Numbered from the stretch's first letter, positions 960 through 62,959 are shown. The stretch is DNA of 64,000 bases from Bugula neritina (GCA_964035545.1 OZ037765.1:12472698-12536697), one strand, 5' to 3'. Notes: a model not told the origin generated them from the letters alone. Numbers and translations: made by a program.

Positions 960-1398
960 AAAATCTCACACGACTAAATAGTTTCGTGCAGTAAGCTGCA
1001 CTTGTCAGGTGTCAGACTAAAAATAAATAAATAAATACAATATATAAAGCATTCCGATTATAAAAGGATTAGACTATAAAAGCTAGTTATTCAATAGAAA
1101 AAAGCTAATTTATAATAGGTAATAAGTGCTTGAATTTTTATGTAACATTGCCCAAGTAGTGCTTTCGTGCATGTCTGCATGTGGATAAAATTTCATTCCT
1201 GTTATTAAGGGAAGATGTACTGGGCTGGTATACTATGAAATACTTTTCCCATAGGCAGAGGTTGCACCTTTTAGTAACTTTGTTGTATGAGTTAGTCTTT
1301 ATAACAACTCGAGCACTTATTACCTATTATAAATTTGCTTTTTTTATTGAATAACTAGCTTTTATAGTCTAATCCTTTTATAATCGAAATGCTTTACA
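960..1398 (-). mobile_element. Penelope-like element 3' fragment with inverted partial pLTR
   Basis: Minus strand 1310-1138 translates RVVIKTNSYNKVTKRCNLCLWEKYFIVYQPSTSSLNNRNEILSTCRHARKHYLGNVT* (CxLCxxEK...LNxRxE...CRH, a PLE endonuclease C-terminus). 1043-1132 and 1309-1398 are inverted copies. A hammerhead motif lies at 964-1016. Confidence 0.75.
964..1016 (-). ncRNA. Minimal type I hammerhead ribozyme motif (G8->A, probably inactive)
   Basis: Reverse complement: UCUGACAC-CUGACAA-GUGCAG(cuua)CUGCAC-GAAA-CUA(uu)UAG-UC^GUGUGAGA. Stems I-III pair, but the core is CUGACAA rather than CUGANGA. Confidence 0.75.
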
Positions 1399-3170
1399 CT
1401 TGACACTGCTTTTGGGCTGAGATAGTTTGCATGCATTTAGCGTTTGATTATTAAATTGTTCCTTCAGTTTATTCACATTAGTTAGAACTTCATTGGCAAA
1501 CTGTCCTGTTATGTCTTCAGGATTTTTTTCTAGAACAGCCTTTCAAGTCTTACAGCACTTTAGGGGTGTAGCTAGCTTTAAAATGTCCACGTTCCCATTT
1601 TTAAGCTGCCACTTTGTTTTGTGTTTGCTGAAACACTCTATGCATGATCCTGCTGATGGTGAAAGCTTTTTGAAGTCAACTAGTGCCTAACCTTTTTTTG
1701 CCTCTTCCTCTGTTGAAATAACTGGATTTTTTCATTAAATGACTTATTGTCTGTTTTCTATTTCTGTAGTCATTCTTTGTTGATGATTTGTTTATTATGC
1801 CATGTGTCAGCAATCCTGTTTTATAAGTAAGTTTCATTTTGCTTCATGGTACACACAGACTGAAGTTAGCCTGAAATAAATGCCAACAAAGACTTATTAC
1901 ATTTTGAAAGTAAACGGAAATTAGCCTGAAATATTCCCAACCTTGCCACATTTTGTATGTTGTGACTGCAATAAATTATACTTTCTCCCTATTTTTTTAA
2001 TGTTCATTAATTAAAAGTTTTGAAAAACAAATATTTTTATTCGTTTATGGGTAAATTCATGTTAGCTCTTGGTAGCACCACAGTTTCTATCTTGCATTAG
2101 CACTATTCAGGTAACTTTTCATTATTAGACAATCTGATTTCTTTAAGATGGCTTTTGTCAGCCTAAAGATATTATAATAAGTATAATTCACTCTGCCTAA
2201 TTCAGTCCAACAATGATTTTTGGTGCTGAAAAATATTTTATATCAAGCTCAAATGTTGGTTGCATTGTTGTTTTATTATATTCAAATACTTCATAAAAAT
2301 AGAAGCCTTTAATTACTAGTATTTTGGACACTGTTACAAGTTGCAAAGTTACCAATATTTTTGACAATGAATATTATCAGTTTATTCAATAATATTATTC
2401 ACTAATAGAACAAAAAATATAAGAGAGTATAAAATAACGAGTTTTCAATATTTGCTCTGCCTTCAAACAATTCATCATACTAGCAACTGAAATTATTCTT
2501 CTCGCCGGACAAAATTGTGAATATAGGACAAAAGTTTATTTGGAGAAATTTTCTATCTTTTACTTTAACCCTTTTGTTTTTTTTGTTTTGTCTTGTTCAA
2601 TGTTTAAATTTTTCTAAATGTATAAATATTTCTTTTCAAAAACCACAATATAGAGTATTTTCAAAATACTTTTCAGTAAAGTGTTTAACGCCCAACCACC
2701 ACTTGAAAGTTTCATGATTGAACAAATATTATGTTTACATGAAGACAATCTTCGTATGAAGTTCAAGCTATTTTCTCTAGTTTCAGTTCATATTTCATCA
2801 AGTATCTGGTAAAAAAGTATTTTCTCATCAATTGCTTTGTAAAAAGCTGGTGGAACCAAATTCTGCAATAATACGCCCAGCATTATTAGTATTTAGCTAT
2901 TCAAGGAATACAAAAAATATCGCAGGGCTCCTTTTTAAAAAAAAATGTGGAATGATGAGCTGGAATGATTAAGTAAATAATGCAGTCGCAGCCAGGATTT
3001 TACCTCACAGGCCTGTTACCACAATATGCTTTCTATTTGTTTGAAGATGTAATTAATAGGCCAACTTTCTTCTACAAACTTTCAGTAATGTGGTTGCAGC
3101 TCCTACTGCTTAGCAGTTGCGCAGTTTTATTAAACAAATTCATGCTGTAATAGGGTCATTTTATTTAATA

Positions 3171-6050: not shown

Positions 6051-6560
6051 GTAGCTGGAATAAGTAAAAATAAAGTTACTAACACCAACATTAGTACAAC
6101 TCATCTATAGTTAGTGGCAACGCTATGGCTATGTGTTTACTTTATAATATATTTTTCATAAAATTATGAATTCAAAAGGCAGGCTCTCCAGTTATTGATC
6201 AATTTGTCACAAGATAGTACCCTAATTGGTAGCTTAAACTATAAAACAATCTTTAGACAGTAAAAGTTAGCCTAGGAGTGTGCACTTTTTGATTATCCAA
6301 TGTGCTTCGAAAATAAATATTTTGCTTGAATCTATGTAAAGCTTTATCTTGGAGAACTAGTAAGTTTTTCTATAAAGAAAGTGATTGTTAAAATATATTA
6401 TATTAATAATTATTGCATTTTTTAAAGGTTTTCTAGTTGTTTTGTAATAATGTATTATTCTTAGTAATTTGTCTGAATACTTGTTATTTGGATTGTAATC
6501 GAAGGTTATATGCAAAAGATATTATAATATTATTTAATAATGGCATCTAAATAATTCCAG

Positions 6561-9500
6561 GTTTTTACCATTGAGCTTGGAGGCGTCAAGAGAGTGGTTA
6601 TATGTGGTTATGAGATCGTTCATGAAATCCTCTGTAAAAATGCAAATTTTTCAAGCAACAGAAAAACTGATTCTATGCCAAAACATCATTCCAAAATAGC
6701 AGAAGTAACACCAGGTAAAGACAAATGGGTAAACAGAACAAGTTTTGAAATTACAATCCAAAATTATAACTAGAAAAGCATTTATATAACCTGCAAATGA
6801 GTGCCTCTACCTGTAGATGCGTCACTAAAATAAAGTATCAGTCTAGTTTTCGTGGTTGCTCCGAATATGTTTTTACTCTATTATGCACGAGTTCATATTG
6901 TATTGAGTTCATTTAACATGAAGATTGAGGCATCTTTTTGGTTTGAAGAATTTATTGAACTAATTGCTTATGATTAGCAGGTTTTAAAATGGAAATATCT
7001 ATAAATATATTTTACTCTGTGCGACTTGGTTTATGGAGAACTAATATTGCTTGAATGCACTTAGTAATTGTCCACAGTAATAATGAGCTAAATTCTAACA
7101 GAATAAACAAATAAACAGAATTGGGTTATTGAGTTTCATTTCATTCATGCATTATCATCAATGATTAGTATTTAGTAAACAGTAATTCTTTACTGTTTAC
7201 TGGACTGCTGATTCCTGACTTGTAACACAAAAAACTTCTTTCAGCTAGTTTATAATAATTTGTTTCCAATTGTTAAAGCGGTAGGGGATAACTAAAATAT
7301 ATATAAGTATTTCAATACTTCATAAGTTATCTTTATGATGTCATTGGAATGGAACTGTTTCCACGCAATGATATTTTTTATCTATATTGAGTAAGTAAAT
7401 CCAACAATTTTTATGTTTTATAGGAATATTTTGGGCAGAATATCCACATTGGAAAACATTGAGATCGTTTGCTTTAAGCACACTGCGAGAAGAAGGAATG
7501 GGTAAATCTCATCTGGAGCCACGAATAATGCATGAAATACACGCATACATTGACCACTTTATCACACCTCATGTAGGCCAACCAATAAACTTGTCTGACA
7601 GCATCATGCTGGCTACAGCTAATGTGATAAGTTCCATGATACATGGACACAGAAAGAATTACACAGATGCCTTTTTTAAACTCTGGATGAAGCAATTCAG
7701 AGTTTCATTGGAAGCAGCTACAACGGCAGCCATAGCACGGAATATTCCATTTGCAGCATACTTTCCTGGTGATTTTACTGGTGAGTATAATGCAGGGTTG
7801 GGGTCAATTACATGTCAATGTAATTAATTACAATTACAATTACATGAAGATTTGTCAATTACAATTACAATTATAATTACAGTTAAAAAGTAATGTAATT
7901 AATTACAATTACAATTACATGGTAATGTAATTAATTACAATTACAATTACTTTTGTTCTCACAAGGAATAATCGGAAGTTATACAATGTCACTTCTGGGG
8001 TCCAACTACCAGAGGCAATGTTGACAGTGGTGAACCTCCTTTGTTCCCAATAGTGACACTATAGGGTCAATCCATGTCGAATCAACCAAATTTTAAGGGG
8101 TCCCACACTTTTGCTTCTCAGATTTTGCTCATATTTACACCAAACGGACCTACACATGTCCGTAGTACTATTCGTGAATATTTCTGACTTGACACGAAAA
8201 CTTTTTGAGAAATGACTACTTTTATGAACAAAAGTTGGTAAATATTTTAAGGAAAATTTGTGATTTATACTTTTAGACCAAGTTATAAACGTCTATATCT
8301 CGATCGTTTTTCTAGACTGAGCCTAAAATTTGATGTGGAGAATATTTAAAATTGTTTCAAAATTTACAAAAATTTGCCCATATTTAATTTTTTTCTCATC
8401 TATTTCTGCTTTGTCCTATTCGGGTAACAGGTAGCCCACATTCAATGGCTTGGAATATATGCACACGAAGTATTCTGTAGTATGTGTTGCTACTAGTGCA
8501 AATTGATATATATTATCAAATCGCCCGGCAAATTTTAAGTCTCTCTCTAGAAAAATGGTTAAGATATAGACATTTATAAATTGGTCTAAAAGTAAAAATC
8601 ACAAATTTTCCTCAAAATTTTTCCTCACCTTTGTTCACAAAAGTAGTCATTTCTCAAAAAGTTTTTCTATCAGACCAGAAATATTTAAGAAGAGTTCTCA
8701 GTACATGTGTAGGTTTATTTGGTGTAAATATGAACTAAAGTCTGATACACAAAGGCGCCAGCCATTTGGTGAGTTGGCATGGAATGACTCTATACTATAC
8801 TGACTTAATCTGAACTTGTTATTTAACAGTAGGCATGGTAGGAAAAGAAAGAACTTTTTAGGATTTAAAAGTTTGAAGTAATTGACATGTAATTATAAAG
8901 TAATTGTAAAAATCAATTACATTAGATATGTAATTAATTACAATTACAATTACATTTTTATACATCAATTACAAATTACATTCAATTACTTGAATAAATG
9001 TAATTAATTACAACCAATTACAATTACAAATTACAATTACCCCAACCCTGGTATAATGTGTTTGCTCATTGAAATATATTTAAAAGTTGAAATCTTGTTT
9101 GCTTTTTTTTCTGTTTGAAATGATAATAATTTCTTGTTAGGACTAATTTTTGTTAAAATATTTGTTTTCATAAAGCAAGACAAAAAACTAGGCTCTCAAT
9201 GAAGGCAGTCCCTAATGTTTTTTATTTGCAGTAAATACACAGGTTAGAGCATTGGAAACGCATTTTGTGTGTTCACTTCAACTTCTTGTAAATACAATAT
9301 TTATTGGTCTATTTTACATGCATATTTAATACCGAGCTATACTATGATTTCATAAGACCGTTTGTATTTAGGAGTAAAGGCTGATATAAAAGCTTCAGAA
9401 GTGACTATCCCAGAGGCCAGGAGGCAGGTTGAGACTCACAAGGCTAATTTGGATCCAAACAACCTGGTGACTTACATTGATAAGTTTCTATACCATGCTC

Positions 9501-12500
9501 AGAAGAAGAAAGGGGATGAAAACTTGTTCACAGGTATCTAGGTCACCAAGTTTTATAGAAACTGTGTACTTCGAAGCCCAAGACATTTTCATGATTATTC
9601 TGACATGATACCAATCAATACACTTTCACTGTTATTGTGATAAACTTTGTCTCCCATTCTGTTGAATGACCATAAACATTTTTTGAAACTGTATAACTAT
9701 CATTCAAGTTTCACTAGGTATTTTAATAAAATGGTAAAATTGGGCTGAACATTATTGGTATGATTTTGGGTTATGTCGACAATGTTAATTATATCCACCA
9801 GAGTATTTGATGTCAGTGAAAAATATCGGAACATATTTGCTCCTGTTTCAGGAAGAGAACATGCTCAAATCATGCTGCCTACAACATCCACAATACTCAT
9901 TTTCACAGAAACTGTAATTATCAACTGATCTGAGGCAATATCATGGAATCTTGAAAGTAGGTTAGAATAGACCCCTTTTCAGAGGTCCCCAGTGTGCCCC
10001 CCCCCCCCCCCCCTTGCAATTAATAGGTGTGTCCTCCCAAAATAAAAATTGTTGAAGAAAAAAACTTGAACTCATTTTTGTTGTTTTGGTTGCTGAGCAA
10101 TGCTGAAGTGGCACTTCTATAGCATAATTAGAATTTTAGTAGAGCCAAACTTTAAATTCTTAATGAGTTTGCTTTTTATACAAAAGTTCAACCTGTTCAC
10201 TTTCAGAGGACACAACTCTTGAATGTAAAAGCGATATCGGGGACTTCTGAAAAGGGTCTATCCTGTTTTACAGACATAATATCATAATGTTGCAGATGGG
10301 AATGCTGGAATGTCAATGCTGCAACTGTACATTGCTGGTACAGAGACCACATCAACAGCACTAACATGGGCCATGCTTTATATGTGTGCACACCCAGATG
10401 TACAGGTCAAAGTTCAAGAAGAAATAGACAGTGTCTTAGGTTAGCCAGTTAAGTTCTCCTTAATCAAATTGGTAAACCTTTGATAACTATGAATATTATA
10501 AATTAAGATCCTGCATATTAGTTGAAGCTTTTCACTGTCATTTTGCTTGAAGGAACAAATGAAGTGAGATATCAAGACCGATTCACCCTCCCATACACAG
10601 AGGCTGTAATTCTAGAAACCCTTAGGTTGGGAAATATTGCACCTATGGCATTGCCACACACATTGGAGGAAGAGTATACTATTGATGGCGAGGTAAGGAT
10701 TGTTAGATATTCTACTCAGTTCTCTGTAATCAGGAGGTATTTGATATATTTTGAATATTTTTATTATTCCATCACTTATTAATTGTGCTTAAAACCTTCC
10801 AATGTACTTATGGGATGACCAGTTGTTTTTATAATAGTTACTCATAAATTGCTACCAATTTTATACTTATGACTTTGCTAATTTTATGACATCACTATTT
10901 CTATGACATCATTAATCTCATGGCATTAATAGTTATTCCTATGATATTCCTTGTTCTCACACTTGGTTCTTAAAATTGAAGTCATCATCATAATGAAGTT
11001 TTTTGTCGTTTTGGCTTTAATATATACACTCTATAAGTCTGGGCGTTTAGAGTGATGTTTTCATTCAATAAAAATACTCTGTTTTAAATTTATGTTTAAT
11101 TCTCCAGTGGATGACCTGTATTAAGGAATTCTTGACCCACCCCATTTATTCGGTAATAAAGTATTTACACATATCTGAACTGTTATCTACAGGCTGTTTG
11201 AAGGTTGTATACTCAAACAATTTTGTTTTATAAAAATTATATGCAAACATGTCTTACCAATATAATAATGTAATGCCCTCTTCATTATAAAATCGTTGGT
11301 CAAACAGTACTCCATATATTCAGTGCTTGTGTTGAAAGCAGTTCAAAAAAATACATTTGATTGTAATTTTGCAGACATTACCTGCTGGTTGTGAACTAAT
11401 GATAAATATGGCTTCCTTACTGTGGGATGAGAAGGTCTTTGAAGAACCCAACAAGTTTAAACCTGAGAGATACTTGAATGGAGATGTGACTTTGAAGAAA
11501 AACAGAACACTTGCTTTTGGAACGGGTAAGTATTTTTCGTGTGCAAAAAATTGTTATGATTATAATTCCCCTCCAGGTCTTGAAGTTAAATTGCTATTAG
11601 ACATTACTCATAAATTGCTATGGATCTCAGTACAATTTTAACTACTCATTTATTTATAACACATTTAGATATTTTTAATACAATTACCGTCGGCATGGCT
11701 CACAAATTAAAACTGAACCTCCAATTAATATACATATATGTTTCATTGTATAATCCTGGAGACTGAACCCATGGTTATATTCCATATGTTTGTGATAGGC
11801 TTTAGATGTGTGTTTAAAATTGTTTTAGTTACCTAAATTAAGAATACATTGTAAATAAGAGATCGCACTAAAAAGAACAAAAACAATCTACGCTTGCTGT
11901 TACTGACATGAATTCACAACACGAGTGAAGCCTCAAAAGTGGCAGTGTAATAATCACTTTGCTCTTTTACCATGTTTTGTTTTATAGTCTGAAAACAAAG
12001 ATGTAGCTATTGCACACAAAATATAAAGTGTGGTATTTAATCTCTATTTTGATATATATTTCTTTTGCATCATCTTCCTAAACTATTCTTGGTTGAAGCT
12101 GCTGTGCCATAAATAATTACATATCTGGTGGCTGGTGTAGACAGATGTACATTTCTTATTCACCTGAAAGCATATTATGTGAACCTTTTGGTACACAACT
12201 AACCTATCTAGTCCATTTCTTTTCAACTCAAAATAAAATAATTGAGCCAAGTGTTATCTTTATATGTAATCTAATGCTGAATAATTTACTCTTCCATCAG
12301 CACTTATATGATAACTTTTCTGTTATCTACAGGAAGAAGAGCCTGTCTGGGTGAAGGTTTAGCAAGGATGGAACTCAGTCTATTCTTTACTACATTCATG
12401 CAGAGGTTTAAAGTCAGTTTACCAACTGGCCACATACCGAATCTAAATGGTGTATGTTCTATTGTGAATGCACCGGCAAAGTTCACAGTTATTTTTACTA

Positions 12501-12508
12501 AAAGATGA
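6561..12508 (+). CDS. Cytochrome P450, clan 2 / CYP2-like, copy 1 (exons 2-8; first coding exon not found in window)
   Basis: GT-AG exons 6561-6714, 7424-7780, 9372-9533, 10296-10439, 10553-10692, 11375-11525 and 12333-12508 join in frame. Motifs: WKTLR (WxxxR), AGTETT (I helix), ETLR (ExxR), PERY, and FGTG|RRACLGE (haem Cys). AATAAA near 12744. Confidence 0.95.
7793..9050. mobile_element. Non-autonomous hAT element with (AATTAC)n subterminal arrays, in CYP copy 1 intron 3
   Basis: TIR CAGGGTTGGGGT / ACCCCAACCCTG; perfect 8-bp TSD GTATAATG (7785-7792, 9051-9058); absent from copy 2. Confidence 0.92.
8064..8790. mobile_element. MITE nested in the hAT element
   Basis: GGGTCAATCCATGTCGAATCAACCAAA versus inverted TTTGGTGAGTTGGCATGGAATGACTC; long imperfect inverted arms; flanked by TATA/TATA. 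Confidence 0.8.
9969..10259. mobile_element. MITE (AT TSD, ISL2EU/Harbinger-like) in CYP copy 1 intron 4
   Basis: AGACCCCTTTTCAGAGGTCCCC ... GGGGACTTCTGAAAAGGGTCT, flanked by AT/AT. The empty site is visible in copy 2 (TTAGAATTCTGTTTT, ~57676-57690). Confidence 0.85.
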
Positions 12509-13380
12509 AATTATACACAGTGTGTTATGCTGCAATGCTTAAGACTTACCAGTAGGAGTTTTCACATTAATTGATACTAGCTCATTTTTATCAAGTATTT
12601 TTCTTAAAACCATAATTTGATGTAAATATAATATAATCTTATTTTTTGTGTTGTTAACTATTCATTCGTATTCTATTCTGTGATAAATAATTTCAAATAA
12701 CAGGTGAATTGATTTAATAAAAGAATATTTTTTCTGAAATTGAAATAAAACATTAATCCATATAATCTATTTGACACTTTGACTTTTAAACGTATGACAA
12801 TAGTCTAGGCGCAGTGTGAAAATTTAGGTTTTCCATAAAAATTTCTAAAGACAATATTTAATGTGTATTACTTTTAAGCTTTATATAAGTTATAATACAT
12901 TGTGTAAACTTAAAAATAATACATGGCAGTATATTTAGGAAAGGCATATACAATGCATAAAATAAAAAGTTATGCAATTTGCTTAAAGTAACATATACAT
13001 ATAATATGTATAAAAACCTGATGTATTAAAACTCGTACATTTAAACAAAATAAGATGCAATCGGTCCTTCCAGCTCCTCAAATTGACTACAACTTAAGAT
13101 TGGTATTTTGACAACCACACAATTCTGCTAATATAATAATATAGACAACAATTTCATTAATTTTCAAGTAATGCATTACAATATTATAGTAATATTTTGA
13201 TAAGAAAAATACTAACATATTAGTATAATAAATTATATTGCAAATTTCACAATTTCTGGAATGCAGCTATGAATGCAAAAATTTCAACTTTGTTGAGTGC
13301 AACGTCACTACTTTGCTTGTTAACTTTGTTGTTACTTGTGAATTTTGCGGAATCCTATCTTCTCTATTATAACTGTCATA

Positions 13381-14530
13381 ATGTGTATACTAGAAGAAGA
13401 GTTCTTTGATTGTGTTGAAGAGATTGTGGAAGAGTATTTTGATGCTCTGGAAGAGTATTTTGATGCTCTGGAACAGTTAGGTAAGATTCTCAATAAGCAT
13501 GTAACATAATTATGACAGCCATAAGTTAATATGTTTATCATTATAATGAACACTGAATAACTGCTAAGCTATATAATTGTTGTTATCATGGGCATTTAAT
13601 TTCTGACAAATTATTAAAACTGTGGTAATTTTTGACCAACATCACATAGTATAACTTATCCCATGCTATTCATCTAAACTTGACTTATATTGTATTGCTG
13701 ATATATATATATATATATAAACTTGAAGGTGATGAAAAGCCAATTTCAACTCATCTGCCAGAGCAGGCTAAGCTTAATGGCCAAAAAGAACTGAATGATG
13801 AGGGTCAAACCCAACAGCTCCTTTTTGCTGTAAACATTGAACCAGGAGTGGTAAGTTATTTATTCTATCCAGCGTATTATGATATCAATTTATTCTATTG
13901 TGACTTTTTACACTGAAAGCATAAATTTCAATTCGAAGCCGTTTATCAAGATTTCAAATTCCAGCAAGAGAGTTTAAAATATCATGTGCACAAATTAATG
14001 TGTTGCTTGTTATTTGTGTCACATTATTACTTGTGAAATTATATAATCTATTGCAGAAACCCACAGTCACACATGCTAAGGCCCAACCAGAACATGAGTT
14101 TATCGAAGTATGTTAACAGTAGATCCCTATACAGTTTAAATAACTAATATTACAATGATCAACTGGTATTAAAGGATGATTAAGCATAAAAATTGGTTAT
14201 TAACAATCACCTAAAGGTACAATTATAAGCAAATAATATTTCAGGGCTGCTATACTGGGCATTGCCAATTATGTTTCATGGATAGAGGGGAACATGATAG
14301 AAAGAGAGACCAGAGTAAGTGCACTACTTTTTAATAGACTTTGATTTTAACTTGTAATAAACTGTGAATATTTTGTCAGAGTATAACTTTATAGCAAAGG
14401 GTAAAAACTATTTTATAATTCTGTAGATTACAGAGGTAGGAGGTCTATGAAGAAAAGACTCAAGGGGTTTTTCAAAACTAAATTATGTTGTTGCCTGTTT
14501 CCGAATGATAATGATGTTGATGTGCTTTAA
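13381..14530 (+). CDS. Uncharacterised 148-aa protein with tandem FFAT-like motifs, Cys/His cluster and polybasic-CCC tail, copy 1
   Basis: Exons 13381-13480, 13729-13850, 14057-14107, 14245-14314 and 14427-14530, all GT-AG, phases 1/0/0/1 consistent, 447 nt. Protein: MCILEEEFFDCVEEIVEEYFDALEEYFDALEQLGDEKP...[68 protein letters not shown] at 14558. The start could instead be an upstream exon spliced to the AG at 13392-13393. Confidence 0.8.
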
Positions 14531-14860
14531 TTATTTATTGTATTATATTTGATATACAATAAACTACATTCAGTTATTTGAATTTTATTTGCAAAATTTG
14601 ATCAATATTTAATTCAAACTTATTATCAATATATAGGACAGCAGTGTTTACTAAAAACATAAGATACCTTCAATTTTTTTTACATTTCGTTGTTATAATA
14701 CTTTGTAATACTTCCAGCATAATATTCACGGATACAGACAGTTGTAGGCAGATGCAGTGTTTGAGCTGAATCTTATTTTATAATTGATATATCGTTAATT
14801 TATGTTGTTATATGCCAAATATCAGTAGATATTTATATACATACATATTACATAATATAC

Positions 14861-36000: not shown

Positions 36001-37509
36001 TCCTTGATAGCCATCGCCTCCAACTCATCATCACCCAAATTAGAATGGGCAATAGGCAATATCATCCGTAATTTGCTAATAAACGTATTTATAATTTCTA
36101 GTTTAAATTTCATTTTCTTGAGCATAAGGTAAACTTGACTTTCTCTCAAGCCGTATCTGTGCAACAGCTAATTTCTTATTTCTGCATCATGGTCAGACAC
36201 TACGCATTTAGCAGCTTCACCATGTAATGCTGATCTTAGCCGAAGCCCTTTTTCATTCGCTTCCCAAATGTTGTGTGCAGCTGTGCTGTCAAATTGACGT
36301 AGAAAGGTTTCTACATCCGTAGTGCCATCATAAGTTGGGGCTGGTAGTGGTTGCTTCTTGGGCTGTCTAATGTGAAGCATTTGGGCTCGGAGTAGCTGCA
36401 CCAATTGTTCATTTACTTCACCTGTGTTATTGCAATCTGTAGTGTCTAGTCTTTGTTGTGGAGGGTACATCTCCTGCTGTAGCCATCTTTGTGAAATTAA
36501 AGTTCGTCTAGTAATAATAGATCAATCTCACCGCTGCCACCAGTGAAAAGTCCAGTATCTTTAGTTATGTTTCAACTTATTAATGCTTATTTATCTGCTG
36601 CAATTCTTTTTTCGAGTGTGCAATTACCCAAATAAAGTAATTATTTTGATGTATTTTATTTAAACACACACAAGAAACTTTCTCAGAAATCAAAAATCAA
36701 ACAAACTAACTTTTAGCAAAACTCTTTGTAAAAACAAAAACTTCAAAACGGAACTCCAGTAGTTAATCTAAAACAAACGCAAAACAAATTGAAAAATTAG
36801 TCCGACACAGCAACGAAAAAACTAAATTAATCAAAACTTTCTATCTAAAAAAGACATGTCATGAATATTATTGCAATTAAAATAAACTTGCTTTTATTTT
36901 CTTAGCTAACACAACCAGCGATGTTTTTCGTTGTTTTTATTTTGGAGTTGTCTACGTCACTTCAAGACTTACTAAGAGTAAATGTTACTGTTAGTGTAAA
37001 ACTTACTCTAACTTACTATCTAACTCTTAGACTTGGAGTTAACAACTACAAGTACAATTTAGATTTATGTGATAATGATATAATAATTATAATCATAATT
37101 GTGGGCTGTAAGTATGCCGATGCCGTTAGCGGCGCAGCAAGATAGAGTGCTTAGGTACACAGCAGGGGTCAAGGACTTCTCCTCGTGCTGCGCTGCGAGA
37201 TAAAAGCCTCTATCAATCGTGTGACAGTGTTGGACTGAGAACGTTTATATCTATTAGAGAGTTTAGCAAATTCAAGTTTCTGGTCATTGTATTCTGGGCG
37301 AATACGGTGATTTGCTGGGCAGATCACGGGTGGAGATTGGGGTGACTAAGGGGTGGTTTGGAGGTCACGGTGACAGCTTGGGGCTGTCGATATATTATTA
37401 TTCGTATTATTATTATAATTATTATTATAATCATTATTATAAGTTACTGCTAGTCTCCGTTATTTGTTTTGAGTTTGACTCTCATATTAATTTGCACTTG
37501 CAGGTAACA

Positions 37510-37521
37510 AGCTATTTCGGC
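37510..37521 (+). promoter_or_regulatory. Atypical primer-binding site (AGCTATTTCGGC)
   Basis: Directly abuts the 5' LTR and lacks TGG. It is the exact reverse complement of GCCGAAATAGCT, nt 1-12 of the conserved animal tRNA-Phe(GAA) as I recall it. Confidence 0.6.
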
Positions 37522-41967: not shown

Positions 41968-43125
41968 TAGCTTTGTAAGAAGCTAGGGGAGATGTGGGCT
42001 GTAAGTATGCCGATGCCGTTAGCGGCGCAGCAAGATAGAGTGCTTAGGTACACAGCAGGGGTCAAGGACTTCTCCTCGTGCTGCGCTGCGAGATAAAAGC
42101 CTCTATCAATCGTGTGACAGTGTTGGACTGAGAACGTTTATATCTATTAGAGAGTTTAGCAAATTCAAGTTTCTGGTCATTGTATTCTGGGCGAATACGG
42201 TGATTTGCTGGGCAGATCACGGGTGGAGATTGGGGTGACTAAGGGGTGGTTTGGAGGTCACGGTGACAGCTTGGGGCTGTCGATATATTATTATTCGTAT
42301 TATTATTATAATTATTATTATAATCATTATTATAAGTTACTGCTAGTCTCCGTTATTTGTTTTGAGTTTGACTCTCATATTAATTTGCACTTGCAGGTAA
42401 CAATAATTACAATTATATCATATTGATAATCAATATGATTATGAAAACAGAATATAAGTATCACAATGTGAATGTCGTCAGTTACTGTTGGCACAATCAA
42501 AATAGTCAATACTGTGTTATGGTAAGCCTATACACAATTAATATCAATATCATTATGGTTATAATGCTTTGTCTTACTATTATCTATAACTCCTAGCATC
42601 ATTATAGGTATTATTATGTGCCAATTGCCTGTCACTCTAGAATTTCGAACTTATATAATATTTTCATCAAATCTAACAGCTACACTGACTAAATTTTTAA
42701 AATTTTCAATAAAATGGGGATATCGTTGTTCTGTGAGCCTTTAAATCATGCTGTTGAAAGATTACGAGTTTATAAGTAGTCTTTTACTTTCTAGCATTGT
42801 AAATTGTCTGCTTAAGATAATACCTGAAAGTTCAAATTGGAAATCATTTGTTACACTATAACCATGCTACTGCTGAGCATGAAAATGTGGTTCTGTAGAT
42901 AAATGATTTTCATACCATAATTTCTAGCAGCATCACATCAAAACCTTTTTGTGGTGTCAGTTTTAATTGATTGTCAGTTTTTATAATTGTTGCTATTTTA
43001 AGTGTGTTCCTAGAATTTAAAAGCAAATGCAAATAAATGTAGATAAAACTCGCTCTAATATAACTTAATGACCCTTGTCATGTCTCTGCAGGTATTTTTT
43101 GCATAGAGGAAGTAAGACAACTAAA

Positions 43126-52100: not shown

Positions 52101-55100
52101 AAAAAGTTCAATAACAATATTTTGTTGTATTTCAAATATATAATAAATAATTACAGCACATCGACATCATTGTCATTAGTGAAAAAACAACAATACCCAT
52201 GCTTTTTAAAAAGCCCTTGACCTTCTACCTCTGTAATCTACAAAGTTATAAAATGGTCTTTACCCGTTGCTATAAAGTAATTCTCAGACAAAATATTCAC
52301 TGTTGAAATCAAAGTCTTTTAAAAAGTAATGCACTTACTCTAGTCTCTCCTTCCATCATGTTCTCCTCTAGCCATGAAACAGAATTGGCAATGCCCAATT
52401 TGGCATCCTGAAAATATTATTTACTCATAAGTAGCTTTTGGTGATTGTTGATGATCGATTTTGATGTTTACTCATCCTGTGATACCAATAAAATAATTTA
52501 TTATGAATAATAAACAATGTTATAAGGCTTTATGGTTAACGTAATTCGACAAACTCGTGTCCAAAGCTGGCTAATTTTTGTGGAGGCCTTGTCACTGGGT
52601 TTCCGCAAAGGATGAATATTTCTCTGTTTATTATAACAGAAAACAACAAGCAGTACAATAATTTGTGCCTTTGATGATATTTGAAGATTGTTTTGCCTGA
52701 ATTTAAGTTGCCAGTGGACTGCTGCTTTAAATTCAAATATTTGAGTTGAATATAGAAAATAATAAAGTTTAGCCTACCACTCCTTGTTTAATAATGTTGT
52801 TTTATTAATAATAATGTGTTTTATCACTACAAACTGCTTGATGATGTTGCAATATTATTGCAGTTGCTATATATTTGCATATGAAACATTCAGTACCCCA
52901 ATCTATAATTGAAATTTGCTTGGTTGAGATAACAGTGTTTTGTCCAATATATAACCCACAACAAGCATTATATATTGATAGTGTTTATTATTTTATTAAT
53001 TTGATTCGCTTGAACTGCAATGCTGCTCTGTACGGTGTTTTGCCCTAGATATAAACCACAATATTTTGATATCAATGTAGAGTTAATTGATTTATCAATT
53101 TGATTCATGTGCTTTGTAACATTGCTATCTGATGTCCTGTTAGCTTTTTTTCAACAGCTACCCTAAACATGGCTTTGGCAATAATATCATTGGCCTCTCA
53201 AGGGAAGTTTTCTAAAATGATTTCTTTTATCAGGGAATTATATTACTAGTAATACGGGGCGACTAAGCATTTGATTTTCGTTTTGTTGGTCTTTTTTATG
53301 ACAAGTTTGCATTCAAGTTTGGATATTTGATCATTTTTGACAAAAAAGATATTTGTCAGTATCCTATGCATATGCAGTAAAATGACAGCTTGTAGCTTAG
53401 TTTGTGAAATATTTTTTTGCAACCTGGGACTGTCCTGAAACTATCCTCAGTGTTTCTGGGAGATGTACAGTTATGCAATAAAATGGCATGCCAAGCATTG
53501 CCCCCTTACTGCAAGCCTTTGGCTCTTCGAATAGTTCAATGCATTTCATCGCAAATATAAAGCTATGATTATATGCTCTTTGAATATCATCAGTGTTTAT
53601 AAAGATCTACTGTCTGTCTTTATAGCTTGATTGGCTAAAGAAGCATTGTTTAAATTGTCCGGTCATCAGGGTTGAATTCAAATGGTTTTAGCAAAACAGC
53701 TACTTTTGCCAAGTTCATCCAACTTTCCATGCCCTTCATTTCTTGGTTTTGTGCTGTGATAGAGAGTATTCCTTTAACCCTTTCATAAATTAATTATTAA
53801 CCGCCACCCGATCAGGATATGGCGGAGAAAGCTGAGAAATGCATGAAATATTATGTAATCGAAAATTTGTTTTTTTTCTTCTTGAAATTGCATAATTAGT
53901 GTGTATAAACATGTAATCAGCAGTTTTTTTAATACTGTCCTTTTACATACTAAAAAAACTTTGAATGTCCACACATGTACATGTTGTGCATTTATTGAGG
54001 TACTCCTATTGTCCACATATATGTATACGAGTTTATCATTTTGCTGCGAATAAATCAATAGAAGATATTTGAACCATTTATTTACATATATTTTTGTACT
54101 CTAACAATATTAGAGCATTATGATGTTTTGAAAACAAAACTTCTAGAGTGTATAAAGTAATATAGAAGCAATTCTTGTTGAATAAACATAGAGTAGATAT
54201 TTTGTGATTTGAGTTAATGAAGTCATTTAGCTATGACTATTTCATGTATGATACTCTTCAAAGCATTCTGGACAGAGATATTGCTTGCATGTAAAGCACA
54301 TATTTCTTGTTTTTCTGTTACAGCTTTGATTTTTGCATCTTGATGCATTCTTTTGAATTAGTTTGGTTGGCCAGTGGCCAAGTGAAAAATTCAACAAGGT
54401 GCTTCTTTTTGTTCTTGGCAGTTTGGTAGAAGGTTGATCAGGTATTGAAACAGGTTGTTCTCTACCTTTCCTAGAAATCATTGGTTTGCCTACTTGCATT
54501 CAGCTAGCTGCAACTCTGTTTCTAAATCCAAGCAAATCTATTTTTGTAGATGGATTCAGCTATTTACAAATTATTCAACTGTTTGTTATGCCAATTTTCA
54601 AAAAGTGAAAAATATTCGAAGGTACCATCTCTTATGTTTTAAAGTATGCCTGCAACATGAGACGAGGAAATCTGTTAAGCCAACACCCCCATGTTTTTAT
54701 TATGAATTATGAACTTTGACTTCTGTATTTCTTGCCTGGCCTGTGTTTTTTTGGAATTTCACTAAACTTTTTTCTCAAATTGAAAGATTTGTTGAACGGT
54801 GATCAATTCGTTGTTTCACTAGAAAGTAAGCTACTTTCAGCTGCTTCTAAAGTACATGTATAATTGCTTAAAGTTTTTATCTGTTTATCCCACTCTGAAT
54901 AAAACTATTTAGTAGAATGTGGAGCTAAGTCATTGTTAATAATTTGGCATGAAACACTAATTAGTAGCTATAATAATTTGTCTATGGCCTTTTCTTGAGA
55001 CATCTTGTGACAGTAACAGATTTCCTCTTGAAACTGCTTCTGGGCTGGAATAGTTTGCATGTATGTCGTTTGAATAATAAATTGTTCTTCCAGTTTAATT

Positions 55101-58100
55101 ACATATGCTTTTATGCTGCAAGATGACTCGGTGAAATTGTCTGCTATGCCAAATTGAATATATTGGCATAATATTATTCAAAACTGGTATCTGAATAATT
55201 CCAGGTCTTCACCATTGAGCTTGGAGGCGTCAAGAGAGTGGTTATATGTGGTTATGAGATCGTTCATAAAATTCTCTGTAAAAGTGCAAATATTTCAAGC
55301 AACAGAAAAGCTGATTCTATGCCAAAACATCATTCTGAAATTGCAGAAGCGACACCAGGTAAGGGATAATAGTTGAACTAAAACAGTTTTAAAATTACAG
55401 TGCAGCATTATAACTGGAAGCGGAAACTAGAAAATCATCTATATAACCTACAAATATTTGCTTGTCTGTAGATGCGTCGCTGAGATGAAGTATTAATTTA
55501 TTTTTAATAGTTGCCTTGTATTCATTTTCACTCTGTTCTGCACTACTCATTCTTGTATTGCATTTTTCTAACCGCAATTTAAGGCATTTTTTAGTTTAAA
55601 AAATTCATTGAATTGTAGCATAAATACCTTCACATATGAGCTTGTGATAACAGTTTTTAAGATGGAAATATCTATAAATATTTTTTTTTCTGTGCCCTTA
55701 GTTTACAGAGAACTAATATTGCTTGAATGTACTTAGTAATTGTCCAAAATAATAATACAAGCTAAATTCTAATCAAATAATCAAACCAACATAATTTAGA
55801 TATTGAGTTTCATTTCATTCATACATTATCGGGAATGATAATAATTAGGTTTTACAATTCACTGTTTGCTAGACTGCTGATTCCTGACTTTAACACAACA
55901 ATATATTTCAGCTACATGTACATTATGTTATAAGGATCTGTTTCCAATTGTTGAAGCAGTAGGGGCTAAAATATATATTATATGCATTTCAATACTTCAT
56001 AAATTTAGAGTGTTGATCGTTCTTTATGATTTAATTGGAATGGAACTGTTTCCAAACAATGAAAATCTTTTCATCTATATTAGGTAAGTAACTACAGCAA
56101 TTGTTATGTGTTATAGGGATATTTTGGGCAAAATATCCACATTGGAAAACATTGAGATCGTTTGCTCTAAGCACACTGCGAGAAGAAGGAATGGGTAAAT
56201 CTAATCTGGAGCCACGAATAATGCATGAAATACACGCATACATTGACCACTTTATCACACCTCATGTAGGCCAACCAATAAACTTGTCTGACAGCATCAT
56301 GCTGGCTACAGCTAATGTGATGAGTTCCATGATACACGGTCACAGAAAGGACTACACAGATGCCTTTTTTAAACTCTGGATGAAGCAGTTTAGAGTTTCA
56401 TTAGAGGCAACTACAAAGGCAGCCATAGCACGGAATATTCCATTTGCGGCATACTTTCCTGGTGATTTTACTGGTGAGTGTGAAGGGTTCGATGGTTTCA
56501 AACAGGGCCGTCCAACAGCAGGCCCTAGGGCTGGATGCGGTCCTCACACTACATTTATGTGGCCCTCAAAGGCATAACAAATCAAATTATTTTTTACACA
56601 TACGAATTACAGTGGAAAACCACCTTTTGAATGTCTTTTTTTATATATGCTAAAAACAAGCAGCCTGCAGTAACTATTGGGACTTCATTTTGTAATGAGT
56701 CAAAGATATTTAAAATAAAATCACTTGAAAAAACTGATGCTATGGCTCCCAGCTGAAGTTAAAGTTTACAATGTGGCCCTTGCCATGAAATATTCTATTT
56801 CTGTGGCCCTCGCTTTGAAAAGGTTTGACATTCCTGGTTTAAGATGGTTTGAAGATCAGAATTGTGTTTATTATGGGAATTTTTTTGTTTTTAATGTTTA
56901 CAATTTCTTTTCGAATAAATTTTTTCTTGAAATAATTAAATATAGTTTTAGTTCGCCTTGGCAACAGTTGGGCTCCGTAATTTAAGTAAAAATAATTGTT
57001 TATTATTTGCATACATACCTACAATAATGACGATTGAAGCGGTCTCTATTTAGGAGTAAAGGCCGATATAAAAGCTGGAGAAGTGACTATCCCAGAGGCC
57101 ATGAGGCAGGTTGAAGCTCACAAGGCTAATTTGGATCCAAAAAACCTGGTGACTTACATTGATAAGTTTCTATACCACGCTCAGGAGAAGAAAGATCATG
57201 AAAACTTGTTCACAGGTTGTGGGTCCCAAAATTCTATCCAAGTGTTTTTACTTCTTAAACTGAGATACTTTCATGATTGCTGTGACAATACCAATACACT
57301 TTCATTATTATTGTGAAAAACTTAGTCTCCCATACTGTTGAATGACCCTAAACTATTTTTCAAACTATATAACTATCATTAAATGTTTCGCTATTTTAAT
57401 AAAACATTAAGATTATTTTATTAATGAAACCTGACTTTGAAAACACTGACTGAACATTATACGTATGATGATGGGTTAGGTTGAGAGACTGGTTAATCAT
57501 ATCCAACAAGGTATTTGATGTCAGTAAAGAATATTTGAACGTAATTCCTCCTGTTCCTAAACATGTGCAAACTATACTGTCTACAACGGCCACAATGCTC
57601 ATATTCATTTACATTTTCACATAAACTGTAATTATCAACTGGTCTGAAGCAATATCATGGAATTTGGAAAGTAGTTTAGAATTCTGTTTTGCATACATAT
57701 TATATCATAATGTTGCAGATGGGAATGCTGGAATGTCAATGCTGCAACTGTATGCTGCCGGTACAGAGACCACATCAACAGCACTAACATGGGCCATGCT
57801 TTATATGTGTGCACACCCAGATGTACAGGTCAAAGTTCAAGAAGAAATAGACAGTGTCTTAGGTTAGCCAGTTAAGTTGTCCTCTAAATCAAATTGGTAA
57901 ACCTTTGATAGCCAGCAATAAATATAAATTAAGATCCTGCATGCTGACAAAGATTTTCACTCTCATTTTGCTTGAAGGAACTAATGAAGTGAGATATCAA
58001 GACCGATTCACCCTCCCTTACACAGAGGCTGTAATTCTAGAAACTCTAAGGTTGGGAAATATTGTACCTATGGCATTGCCACACACATTGGAGGGAGAGT

Positions 58101-60090: not shown

Positions 60091-60130
60091 AATTATACAC
60101 AGTGTATTATGCTGCAATGCTTAAGACTTG

Positions 60131-60587
60131 AGTTGTGTTTATACCTCGACTGGAAAAAGTTCCAAGTTTCAGTTAATAACACTTGTCCGAGTACCCCTTT
60201 ATAGTCAAACTGAAACTCCGTGAAATCATATTAATGCGGAAGCTTACTTTCTAAAAGTGAAATCTGACTCGCCTAATCGCCATTCGATGCCCTTTGAAAA
60301 CGTCGTGAATTAGTAAAGTGAACAGCATAAGAGCGATAATAAAGAAGACGTAGGCGATATGATTATTAACATATAAGTACGTCATCTAATCGACAAAGTC
60401 TTAACTAAATAACGGTATTTACAAGGAGTTATTACTCTTTTTATCTATTATTCTGAACTCGCCCGATTAAGTTATTACAGTACAAATATTTTTACGAGTG
60501 GCTTTTACAATGCAATGCAACTTAGAAAAATTTCAACTCGGCCAAATTGAATTTCTGACTGAAAATCGTGAAGGTATAAACGCAACT
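60131..60587. mobile_element. PIF/Harbinger-like MITE in the 3' UTR of CYP copy 2
   Basis: TIR AGTTGTGTTTATACCT / AGGTATAAACGCAACT; 3-bp TTG/TTA target duplication; empty site GAC-TTA-CCAG in copy 1 (~12543-12552). Confidence 0.85.
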
Positions 60588-61436: not shown

Positions 61437-62560
61437 ATGTGTATACTAGAAGAAGAGTTCTTTGATTGTGTTGAAGAGATTGTGGAAGAGTATTTTGATG
61501 CTCTGGAACAGTTTGGTAAGATTCTCAATAAGCATACTACATAATTATGACAACAATAAGTTAATATGCTTATCATTATAATGAACACTGAATAACTGCT
61601 AAGCTATACAATTGTTGTTATCATGGGCATTTAATTTCTGACAAATTATTAAAACTGTGGTAATTTTTGACCAACATCACATAGTATAACTTATCCCATG
61701 CTATTCACCTAAACCTAACCTATATTAAACTGATATATAATATATATAAACTTGAAGGTGATGAAAAGCCAATTTCAACTCATCTGCCAGAGCAGGCTAA
61801 GCCTAATGACCAAAAGGAACTGAATGATGAGGGTCAAACCCAACAGCTCCTTTTTGCTGGAAACATTGAACCAGGAGTGGTAGGTTATTTATTCTATTTA
61901 GCGTATATTATGATATCAATTTATTCTATTGTGATTTTTTACACTCAAGGCATAAATTTCAATTTGAAGCTGTTTATCGAAACTTTAAATTCCAGCAAGA
62001 GAGTTTAAAATTTAATGTGCACAAATTAATGTGCTGCTTGTTATTTTTGTCATATTATTATCAGTGAATTCATATAATCTGTTGCAGAAACCCACAGTCA
62101 CATGTGCTAAGCCCTCACCAGAACATGAGTTTACCGAAGTATGTAAATTCTTATATACAGTTTTAATAACTAATATTACACTAGAGCTAATCAACTGGTA
62201 TTACAGGATTAGTAAACATAAAAATTGGTTATTAACAATCACCAAAAGGTACTTATGAGTAAATAATATTTCAGGGCTGCTATACTGGACATTGCCAATT
62301 CTGTTTCATGGATAGAGGGGTACATGTTGGAAGGAGAGGCCAGAGTAAGTGCATTACTTTTTAATAGACTTTGATTTTAATTTGCATTAAACTGTGAATA
62401 TTTTGTCTGAGTATAACTTTATAGCAATGGGCAAAAACTATTTTATAATTCTTTAGACTTCAGAGGTAGAAGGTCTATGAAGAAAAGACTCAAGAGGTTC
62501 TTCAAAACTAAATTATGCTGTTGCCTGTTTCCAAACGATAATGATGTTGATGTGCTTTAA
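61437..62560 (+). CDS. Uncharacterised 141-aa FFAT-motif / polybasic-CCC protein, copy 2
   Basis: Exons 61437-61515, 61758-61879, 62088-62138, 62275-62344 and 62457-62560 use the same splice sites and phases as copy 1. Last-exon differences are mostly synonymous. AATAAA at ~62588. Confidence 0.8.
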
Positions 62561-62959
62561 TAATTTATTATATTATATTTAATATGCAATAAACCATATT
62601 CTGTTATTTTAGTTTTATTTTCAAAATTTGATCGATATTTAATTCAAACTTGTTACCATTATAATATAATGGTGATATAGTGATATAATTATATTATATA
62701 CATGATAATTCATTAGAACAGAAGTTAAAATGAGATGACAACTACAAACAAGAATAACTCAAATCTCCCATAATATAATTTAACAGCTGCTCATAATATT
62801 TCATGGTATATAAAACCAGCAATTTACATGAACTTTGATTATTTAGTTAAACAGAATGAAATTGGAAATAAAAGAAAACTGACATGTTGAACAGCCGTAA
62901 TGAAGCACAGAGTTACAGGTCATGTTGAACTAAATATTTCTGTTAGATTAGAATGAAGA

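What the first reader, a model, noticed from the sequence alone, without database searches (positions are those of the whole stretch)
13381..14530. Hidden 5-exon micro-gene with the architecture of an ER-membrane contact-site tether, co-duplicated with the P450
Seen: five short exons, never assembled by the ORF track, splice in frame in both cassette copies (13381-14530 and 61437-62560) with conserved GT-AG sites. The last exon differs mostly by synonymous changes (AGG/AGA, TTT/TTC, TGT/TGC, CCG/CCA, AAT/AAC). The N-terminus has EEEFFDCVE and EEYFDALE repeats, the middle is low-complexity, then come CYTGHCQ(L/F)C..H, a basic stretch RGRRSMKKRLK(G/R)FFKTK, CCC, and terminal NDNDVDVL. Known: EFFDAxE in an acidic tract is the FFAT motif that binds ER VAP proteins; polybasic plus clustered Cys is a typical palmitoylation/plasma-membrane anchor; D-x-L-COOH fits a class III PDZ ligand. 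Inference: a minimal lineage-specific VAP-to-membrane tether. I recognise no family for it, and it sits <900 bp behind an ER-anchored P450.
Basis: partly seen in the sequence, partly recalled or inferred. Interest (0 to 1): 0.8.

Follow-up and report, generated by a model that had tools for sequence, protein, structure and literature searches.

The report
Unannotated small FFAT-motif gene family
The five short exons are a real, so far mis-annotated small gene family found only in the bryozoan Bugula neritina complex; its protein starts with two high-scoring ER-VAP-binding (FFAT) motifs and ends in what looks like a charge-plus-lipid membrane anchor, but neither expression nor the proposed ER-to-membrane tether role has been tested.

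Summary
Observation confirmed and extended. Both window copies splice in frame with GT-AG introns, giving 148 and 141 aa. I found five more full-length copies: two elsewhere on this chromosome and three in the public Bugula neritina draft assembly. All 28 introns keep GT-AG, exon indels are multiples of three, and stop codon and AATAAA are conserved. Five of seven ORFs are intact.

A codon model gives omega 0.42 for exons 2-5 (p=7e-8 against 1) and 0.14-0.26 for exons 4-5, so this is a protein-coding family under purifying selection. Neither Pfam nor 1.84 billion representative proteins gave a match. NCBI's two models are chimeric.

By the published scoring, the N-terminal motifs score 1.0 and 1.5, the strong class, in essentially all copies. 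The genome encodes two VAP-type MSP domains. The same 25 residues are also predicted to form one strongly amphipathic acidic helix, which is a caveat for FFAT binding.

The PDZ-ligand reading is not conserved, and one intact copy stands alone without a P450. Exon 1 and its flanks stay about 96% identical among paralogues that differ by about 30% elsewhere; this is unexplained. No RNA evidence could be obtained. The tether model is plausible (about 0.3) but untested.

The parts
13381..13480 (+). Copy c1, exon 1: start codon and the acidic N-terminus. It holds FFAT-grade motifs at 13399-13419 (EFFDCVE), 13432-13452 (EYFDALE) and 13453-13473. The third motif comes from a c1-only 21-nt tandem duplication (13427-13447 / 13448-13468).
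13729..13850 (+). Copy c1, exon 2: fast-evolving, indel-rich, low-complexity linker.
   Evidence: Indels among paralogues are multiples of 3; omega is 0.35-0.76.
14057..14107 (+). Copy c1, exon 3: linker, 17 codons.
14245..14314 (+). Copy c1, exon 4: conserved Cys/His element G-C-x-x-G-H-C-x-x-C-x-M.
14427..14530 (+). Copy c1, exon 5: RGRRS, polybasic-aromatic stretch (14432-14482), invariant CCC (14486-14494), acidic tail and TAA stop.
14558..14563 (+). AATAAA polyadenylation signal 28 nt after the stop codon, conserved in the aligned paralogues.
13300..13530 (+). Homogenised 5' block: about 80 nt upstream of the ATG, exon 1 and about 50 nt of intron 1. It is 95-98% identical in all seven copies, although the rest of the gene differs by about 30% between clades.
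13269..13409 (+). Upstream ORF for a hydrophobic 46-aa peptide that overlaps the main start codon out of frame. It is in frame with the main ORF only in copies p3 and p4.
61437..61515 (+). Copy c2, exon 1: two FFAT-grade motifs at 61455-61475 and 61488-61508.
61758..61879 (+). Copy c2, exon 2.
62088..62138 (+). Copy c2, exon 3.
62275..62344 (+). Copy c2, exon 4.
62457..62560 (+). Copy c2, exon 5 (CCC at 62516-62524), followed by AATAAA at 62588.
52219..52560 (-). Degenerate fragment of a further copy: exon 4, intron 4 and a frameshifted exon 5, with no exon 1 or 2. A pseudogene remnant.

Best explanation
SHOWN: 13381-14530 and 61437-62560 are two members of a small, young family of real five-exon protein-coding genes. 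This genome has four full copies and at least three fragments, all on one chromosome between 12.19 and 12.54 Mb. The family is known so far only from the Bugula neritina species complex. Each gene encodes a 141-154-aa protein with three parts: an acidic 26-residue N-terminus (net charge about -10) carrying two FFAT-grade motifs, a fast-evolving disordered linker of about 70-85 residues, and a conserved C-terminal part of about 57 residues. That C-terminal part has a Cys/His element, an RGRRS site, a polybasic-aromatic stretch, an invariant CCC and an acidic tail. The basic stretch has a net charge of about +9.

INFERRED (most likely mechanism): the protein is cytosolic and attaches to a non-ER membrane through its C-terminus, by electrostatic binding plus S-acylation of the Cys cluster. 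Its tandem FFAT motifs bind the MSP domains of ER-resident VAP, possibly both subunits of a VAP dimer. It would then act as a small adaptor or tether, or as a competitor for VAP, at ER contact sites. The RRxS-type site next to the basic stretch could switch membrane binding.

I put the gene being real and coding at about 0.85-0.9. The confidence figure given for this explanation is for the full VAP-adaptor mechanism.
For: Gene reality:
- Both window copies splice in frame with GT-AG introns.
- Seven full-length copies exist in two assemblies, and 28 of 28 introns are GT-AG. The stop position is conserved, and five ORFs are intact.
- Exon indels between clades are multiples of 3.
- AATAAA is conserved 28 nt after the stop.
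- Codon-model omega is 0.42 for exons 2-5; the likelihood-ratio test against omega=1 gives 2dlnL 29.2, p=7e-8. Pairwise omega is 0.14-0.26 for exons 4-5, and bootstrap values never reach 1.
- The stand-alone intact copy p4 shares only about -200 nt to +67 nt around the ORF, which outlines the gene unit.

FFAT:
- With the published penalty table (PMC3261905 Table S2A), motif 1 scores 1.0 in 7 of 7 copies. Motif 2 scores 1.5 in six copies and 2.5 in p4.
- That paper counts only 15 human motifs at <=1 and sees targeting up to about 2.
- Composition-preserving shuffles reach <=1.0 in 0.01% of cases.
- The only hits at <=1.5 in the six-frame translation of the whole window are these motifs.
- Even permutations that keep the amphipathic pattern give two motifs <=1.5 in only 0.02% of cases.
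- Partner present: two loci encode MSP domains with the VAP signature FKVKTTAP.RY.VRPNSG.

Anchor:
- RGRRS, K/R positions, FF and CCC are invariant in six copies.
- This region has the lowest omega.

Linker: AlphaFold2 predicts the part after residue 28 as disordered.
Against: - No RNA evidence.
- Residues 4-28, which hold both motifs, are predicted as one helix (pLDDT 79-91, single sequence). The hydrophobic moment is 0.52-0.60, reached by 0.04% of shuffles. FFAT motifs bind VAP in extended form, and the scoring paper marks down helical motifs.
- Conservation of the motifs cannot be credited to protein-level selection. Exon 1 has dS about 0, and its non-coding flanks are equally conserved.
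- In p3 and p4 an upstream ATG is in frame and would add a hydrophobic N-terminal extension.
- Palmitoylation and membrane binding are inferred from sequence pattern alone.
- Recent pairs have omega of about 0.5, not significantly below 1. One copy in each genome carries a frameshift, and there are several fragments.
Confidence: 0.32

Rival explanations
1. The gene is the same, but the N-terminus is an acidic amphipathic helix that docks onto another partner, dimerises, or folds back on the protein's own basic C-terminus. The FFAT likeness is then a by-product of an EE-(aromatic pair)-D-(hydrophobic pair)-E repeat. The protein would be a small lipid/charge-anchored scaffold or regulator that does not involve VAP. 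By analogy, from memory, this resembles small lipid-anchored scaffolds such as AKAP18-alpha or smAKAP.
For: - AlphaFold2 predicts a helix at 4-28 with pLDDT 79-91.
- The hydrophobic moment is 0.52-0.60, reached by 0.04% of shuffles.
- The two ends carry opposite charges, -10 and +9.
- Given the amphipathic pattern, one motif <=1.5 arises in 7.5% of permutations.
- The two motifs are copies of one 11-residue unit, and c1 shows the unit still duplicating.
Against: - Two motifs <=1.5 arise in only 0.02% of pattern-preserving permutations.
- D at position 4 and A/C at position 5 fit FFAT exactly.
- The recalled AKAP RII-helix consensus is not matched in any copy.
- Single-sequence AlphaFold2 often draws conditionally folding motifs as helices.
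Confidence: 0.3
2. The protein is a secreted or membrane-inserted protein. Translation starts at the upstream ATG, as is possible in copy p4. The hydrophobic stretch of about 33-40 residues acts as a signal peptide or membrane anchor. The conserved cysteines would then form disulfides, or the FFAT region would sit directly at a membrane.
For: - In p3 and p4 the upstream ATG is in frame and encodes a Leu-rich hydrophobic segment running into the MCIL start.
- The same hydrophobic peptide frame is recognisable in 5 of 7 copies.
Against: - The two frames are uncoupled in c1 (+1 nt) and by a 2-nt insertion in c2, n1, n2 and n3, while the downstream ORF stays intact and constrained.
- Only p4 could make the fusion protein; p3 is frameshifted after codon 4.
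- An acidic FFAT-like tract and a polybasic CCC tail are typical of cytosolic proteins.
Confidence: 0.08
3. The copies are decaying relics: not expressed, or expressed without function. What is maintained today is the nucleotide-level 5' block, as a regulatory element or as the hydrophobic upstream micropeptide, rather than the 141-154-aa protein.
For: - The 5' block, including non-coding flanks, is about 96% identical across clades.
- Omega of recent pairs is about 0.5 and not significantly below 1; the middle region of c1/c2 reaches 2.6.
- There are frameshifts in p3 and n2 and at least three fragments.
- There is no transcript-derived protein in the databases.
Against: - Omega is 0.42 with p=7e-8 over the family, and 0.14-0.26 in exons 4-5.
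- Five of seven ORFs are intact and all 28 splice sites, the stop codon and the polyA signal are intact.
- All indels are in phase.
Confidence: 0.12

Closest known systems
Eukaryotic FFAT-motif VAP partners (OSBP/ORPs, CERT, Nir2, Rab3GAP1, AKAP220; Mikitova & Levine 2012, PMC3261905)
   Same: It has a seven-residue core of the form E-[FY]-F-D-[AC]-x-E in an acidic tract. The scores of 1.0 and 1.5 fall in the range of proven motifs. Cys at position 5 is an accepted optimal residue, as in the Rab3GAP1 motif EFFEC-S.
   Different: There is no sequence homology outside the motif and no lipid-transfer or other domain. The motifs sit at the extreme N-terminus inside a predicted helix. VAP binding has not been tested.
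Chlamydia trachomatis IncV (two FFAT motifs, ER-inclusion tether; PMC7610837, PMC9286742)
   Same: It is a small protein whose main recognisable features are two neighbouring FFAT cores plus a membrane attachment. Conceptually it is a minimal VAP tether.
   Different: IncV is a bacterial type III-secreted transmembrane protein. Its acidic tracts are replaced by phosphorylatable serine tracts. The Bugula protein is an intron-containing animal gene with genetically encoded acidic tracts and no transmembrane segment when translated from the conserved start.
Polybasic plus S-acyl membrane anchors (MARCKS effector domain, GAP-43, paralemmin, Ras/Rho hypervariable regions; from general knowledge)
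   Same: It has a cluster of Lys/Arg with Phe residues next to a Cys cluster, and a nearby RRxS-type site that could act as an electrostatic switch.
   Different: There is no homology and no CAAX box or N-terminal acylation motif. The Cys cluster lies 11-13 residues from the C-terminus and is followed by an acidic tail. Acylation is not shown.
NCBI models EB796_013049 and EB796_013057 (hypothetical proteins, Bugula neritina GCA_010799875.2)
   Same: They are the same loci (copies n3 and n1/n2). Both models join exon 1 to exon 2 at the junction I infer.
   Different: Both models are chimeric. They miss exons 3-5 and run into unrelated sequence, and one splices in a P450 terminal exon. The C-terminal module is therefore absent from protein databases.

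Membership tests
FFAT-motif VAP-binding proteins | The seven-residue core plus the upstream flank have <=2 suboptimal elements by the Mikitova & Levine table. | tested here: met
   Motif 1 scores 1.0 in 7 of 7 copies. Motif 2 scores 1.5 in 6 of 7 and 2.5 in p4.
FFAT-motif VAP-binding proteins | The key residues are conserved among homologues more than their surroundings. | tested here: inconclusive
   The residues are identical in all copies. But the whole exon and its non-coding flanks are kept identical at the nucleotide level (dS about 0), so protein-level conservation cannot be separated out.
FFAT-motif VAP-binding proteins | The motif lies in an unstructured, non-helical region. | tested here: inconclusive
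   Single-sequence AlphaFold2 predicts a helix at 4-28 (pLDDT 79-91), and the hydrophobic moment is extreme. These are predictions only, but they point against the feature.
FFAT-motif VAP-binding proteins | The motif is exposed to the cytosol. | tested here: inconclusive
   There is no hydrophobic leader from the conserved ATG. An in-frame hydrophobic extension is possible only in p4 (p3 is frameshifted).
FFAT-motif VAP-binding proteins | The protein physically binds the MSP domain of VAP. | not testable with these tools
   The partner exists: two VAP-type MSP loci. No complex modelling or assay is available here.
S-acylated polybasic membrane anchors | A Cys cluster lies next to basic/hydrophobic residues, is conserved and is under selection. 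| tested here: met
   CCC, FF and most K/R positions are invariant. Omega is 0.14-0.26.
S-acylated polybasic membrane anchors | The protein is actually acylated and localises to a membrane. | not testable with these tools
   This needs acyl-RAC/ABE and imaging.
Class III PDZ ligands | D/E at position -2 and a hydrophobic C-terminal residue, conserved among copies. | tested here: not met
   Six copies end in D-V-L, but the intact paralogue p4 ends in I-V-L.
Any curated protein family (Pfam) or any sequence relative | A significant profile or sequence match. | tested here: not met
   Pfam gave no hit, searched exon by exon. The exon-5 profile gave 0 hits in 1.84e9 representatives and 0 in metagenome contigs. 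The word search found only the Bugula models.
Part of the neighbouring cytochrome P450 gene | Shares the P450 transcript or reading frame, or always accompanies a P450. | tested here: not met
   The P450 ORF ends at 12508 and has AATAAA signals at 12716 and 12744. Copy p4 is intact with no P450 within 10 kb.

The most novel reading that the evidence does not exclude
An orphan gene born in the bryozoan lineage encodes a minimal ER contact-site adaptor built only from short linear motifs: tandem FFATs, a disordered spacer and a polybasic S-acyl anchor. Its FFAT-encoding first exon, with promoter-proximal and intronic flanks, is kept nearly identical among paralogues that differ by 30% elsewhere. 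That could arise by localised gene conversion and/or nucleotide-level selection.
Probability: 0.25. Interest if true: 0.6.

Novelty: new member of a known kind. Interest (0 to 1): 0.42.

Why it matters
If the protein binds VAP, it would be one of the smallest natural VAP adaptors. It would also show how a new gene can gain a cell-biological role from short linear motifs alone, and it would be easy to test with peptides and simple mutants.

Independently of function, three things follow. The finding corrects two chimeric public gene models. It adds a family to the poorly annotated bryozoan proteome. And it shows a sharply bounded 230-nt block of concerted or constrained evolution at the 5' end of a young gene family. 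Outside contact-site biology and orphan-gene evolution the interest is modest.

Tried and rejected
Searches were exon by exon by reference. The only spliced piece used was the natural exon 1+2 stretch of database protein P0001. So no whole-protein profile search, no whole-protein fold and no VAP-complex model were made.
- Pfam on exons 1, 2, 4 and 5: nothing. Exon 3 is too short to scan.
- Word search anchored on exon 1: only three Bugula-derived entries.
- Exon-5 profile: 0 hits against 1.84e9 representatives and none in JGI metagenome contigs. A 33-position profile has limited reach, so distant relatives are not excluded.
- ESM Atlas look-alikes for exon 1+2: no usable feature hit, and the structural rows are meaningless for a helix plus coil.
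- Rfam on 13100-14700: nothing. The RNA fold of the conserved block gives only z = -2.3.
- An antisense ORF as the reason for the conserved block: rejected, because the same indels break it.
- High-copy repeat or transposon origin: rejected. There are only 4 full and about 3 partial copies, all in one 345-kb region.
- AKAP RII-binding helix consensus (recalled from memory): not matched.
- Class III PDZ ligand: not conserved.
- Alternative 3' exons of the P450: rejected.

Full report
**What is there**

The window is G000:C1:12472698-12536697 of a 216-Mb assembly. The only database relatives are named Bugula neritina. The public B. neritina draft (GCA_010799875.2, contig VXIV02001929.1) is about 85-90% identical to the window at the DNA level. 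The window therefore comes from B. neritina or a sibling species of that complex.

The window holds a duplication of about 8 kb, 6524-14633 against 55168-62663, at about 82-92% identity. It carries a multi-exon cytochrome P450 followed by the stretch in question.

- Copy c1 (exons 13381-13480, 13729-13850, 14057-14107, 14245-14314, 14427-14530) gives 447 nt and 148 aa.
- Copy c2 (61437-61515, 61758-61879, 62088-62138, 62275-62344, 62457-62560) gives 426 nt and 141 aa.
- Every intron in both copies is GT..AG.
- The length difference is a 21-nt tandem duplication in c1, which adds a third EYFDALE unit.
- Between c1 and c2 the exons differ at 6.1% of aligned sites and the introns at about 8.7% plus indels. 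That contrast alone is weak.

**More copies give the decisive test**

A DNA search of the whole genome found two further full-length copies.

- p3 lies 34 kb upstream of the window on the minus strand, again downstream of a P450.
- p4 lies about 290 kb away with no P450 within 10 kb. Its similarity to c1 runs only from about 200 nt before the ATG to 67 nt after the stop.
- There are also fragments: window 52219-52560 on the minus strand, and two just upstream of the window.
- The public draft assembly adds three more full copies, n1, n2 and n3.

Outside exon 1 the seven copies form three clades that differ by about 30%, with about 10% divergence within clades. Despite that divergence:

- all 28 introns keep GT-AG;
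- the stop codon sits at the same place;
- an AATAAA follows 28 nt later;
- exon length differences between clades are all multiples of three;
- five ORFs are fully open.

Copy p3 has a 2-nt insertion after codon 4 and is otherwise open. Copy n2 has a 1-nt deletion in exon 5. An open frame of 141 codons has a chance of about 5e-5 at this composition.

**Selection**

- Pairwise NG86 omega is 0.24-0.37 between clades.
- By region, exons 4-5 give 0.14-0.26 (no bootstrap replicate reaches 1) and the linker gives 0.35-0.76.
- Recent pairs give about 0.5, which is not significant.
- A GY codon model on exons 2-5 of six copies gives omega 0.42. Fixing omega at 1 costs 2dlnL = 29.2, p = 7e-8.

This is a protein-coding family under purifying selection, strongest on the C-terminal part.

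**Relatives**

- Pfam finds nothing in exons 1, 2, 4 or 5.
- A word search anchored on exon 1 found only three entries. Two are NCBI models (EB796_013049 and EB796_013057). The third is a read-through ORF on a 948-bp JGI contig that is 99.7% identical to n1.
- Both NCBI models join exon 1 to exon 2 exactly as in my model. They then leave the gene, and one includes a P450 terminal exon. Exons 3-5 are missing from them.
- A profile of exon 5 (alignment A1) finds only the known copies in the own genome. It finds nothing among 1.84 billion representative proteins and nothing in metagenome contigs.

A whole-protein profile search therefore remains undone, and short exon queries have limited reach.

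**The N-terminus**

I scored the motifs with the published penalty table (Mikitova & Levine 2012, PMC3261905, Table S2A).

- EFFDCVE with its flank scores 1.0 in all seven copies.
- EYFDALE scores 1.5 in six copies and 2.5 in p4, where a flank Glu is Lys.
- The paper lists only 15 human motifs at <=1 and sees ER targeting up to about 2.
- Shuffles of the protein reach <=1.0 in 0.01% of cases.
- In 96,000 residues of six-frame translation of the window, the only hits at <=1.5 are these motifs.
- The genome encodes at least two MSP domains with the VAP signature FKVKTTAP.RY.VRPNSG.

So the FFAT reading passes the sequence test and the partner exists. Three caveats apply.

1. Residues 4-28 are predicted as one helix: AlphaFold2 on the natural exon 1+2 stretch of P0001, single sequence, pLDDT 79-91. 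The segment has a helical hydrophobic moment of 0.52-0.60, reached by 0.04% of shuffles. FFAT motifs bind in extended form. Permutations that keep the amphipathic pattern still give one motif <=1.0 in 2.3% of cases, but two motifs <=1.5 in only 0.02%.
2. Conservation of the motifs cannot be read as protein-level selection (see the 5' block below).
3. The choice of start codon is not fully settled (see the upstream frame below).

**The 5' block (unexplained)**

From about 80 nt before the ATG to about 50 nt into intron 1 (13300-13530), all seven copies are 95-98% identical with no clade structure. Identity falls to 40-50% on either side in between-clade comparisons. Exon 1 has dS of about 0, against about 1 elsewhere.

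A 2-nt indel at -22 is shared by c2 and all three copies of the other assembly, cutting across clades. This shows gene conversion at least in part. The equally sharp borders in all copies suggest constraint as well. There is no Rfam match, and the RNA fold gives only z = -2.3.

**The upstream frame**

An ATG about 100-112 nt upstream opens a Leu-rich hydrophobic frame.

- In p3 and p4 it is in frame with the main ORF.
- In c1 a +1 insertion uncouples the two frames.
- In c2, n1, n2 and n3 a +2 insertion uncouples them.
- In most copies it is therefore at best a short upstream ORF (13269-13409 in c1).

The MCIL ATG is the only start shared by all copies, so I take it as the start. 5' mapping is needed to confirm this.

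**The C-terminus**

- Exon 4 keeps G-C-x-x-G-H-C-x-x-C-x-M.
- Exon 5 keeps RGRRS, most basic positions, FF, CCC and D-V-x-V-L.
- The charge is about +9, against about -10 at the N-terminus.
- A polybasic-aromatic stretch next to a Cys cluster is the usual make-up of electrostatic plus S-acyl membrane anchors. This is general knowledge, not something tested here.
- The class III PDZ reading fails in p4, which ends in IVL.

**Verdict**

The VAP-adaptor/tether mechanism is the single most likely function, but it rests on motifs only (about 0.3). A VAP-independent role for an acidic amphipathic helix is nearly as likely.

Linkage to the P450 is simple adjacency in a tandemly duplicating cluster. 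It is not evidence of shared function, because the intact copy p4 stands alone.

**Limits**

Noticed in passing
window 13300-13530 (and 61356-61565 in copy 2): A sharply bounded block of about 230 nt (5' flank, exon 1 and the start of intron 1) is 95-98% identical in all seven paralogues and orthologues, although they differ by about 30% elsewhere. A shared 2-nt indel cuts across clades. The cause could be gene conversion and/or nucleotide-level constraint; it is unknown.
   Followed up: partly
window 13269-13409; equivalents in L003, L007, L016, L017: A conserved upstream ATG opens a Leu-rich hydrophobic frame of 26-46 codons. It is fused in frame to the main ORF only in p3 and p4. It could be an upstream ORF, a micropeptide or a lost signal/anchor segment.
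   Followed up: partly
window 13427-13468: A perfect 21-nt tandem duplication specific to copy c1 adds a third EYFDALE unit, scored at 2.0.
   Followed up: yes
window 52219-52560 (-); L004 about 1170-2130 (-): There are degenerate partial copies holding exons 3/4-5 only. They have a frameshifted or truncated exon 5 and, in L004, a tandem repeat of the exon 4-5 unit. The family is undergoing birth and death inside the P450 cluster.
   Followed up: partly
L016 10001-11469; L017 10001-15160 (GCA_010799875.2, VXIV02001929.1): The public gene models EB796_013049 and EB796_013057 are chimeric. They join exons 1 and 2 correctly and then run into unrelated sequence. One inserts a P450 terminal exon between exon 1 of one copy and exon 2 of the next.
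   Followed up: yes
window 14340-14420 compared with L003: Intron 4 of c1 is 92-97% identical to that of the otherwise 30%-divergent copy p3, higher than the flanking exons. This looks like a second gene-conversion tract.
   Followed up: no
window 37100-37510 and 41993-42403: Two direct repeats of 411 bp are 100% identical.
   Followed up: no
window against L016/L017: The window genome and the public B. neritina draft differ by about 10-15% in non-coding DNA of this cluster. This suggests different sibling species of the B. neritina complex rather than haplotypes.
   Followed up: no
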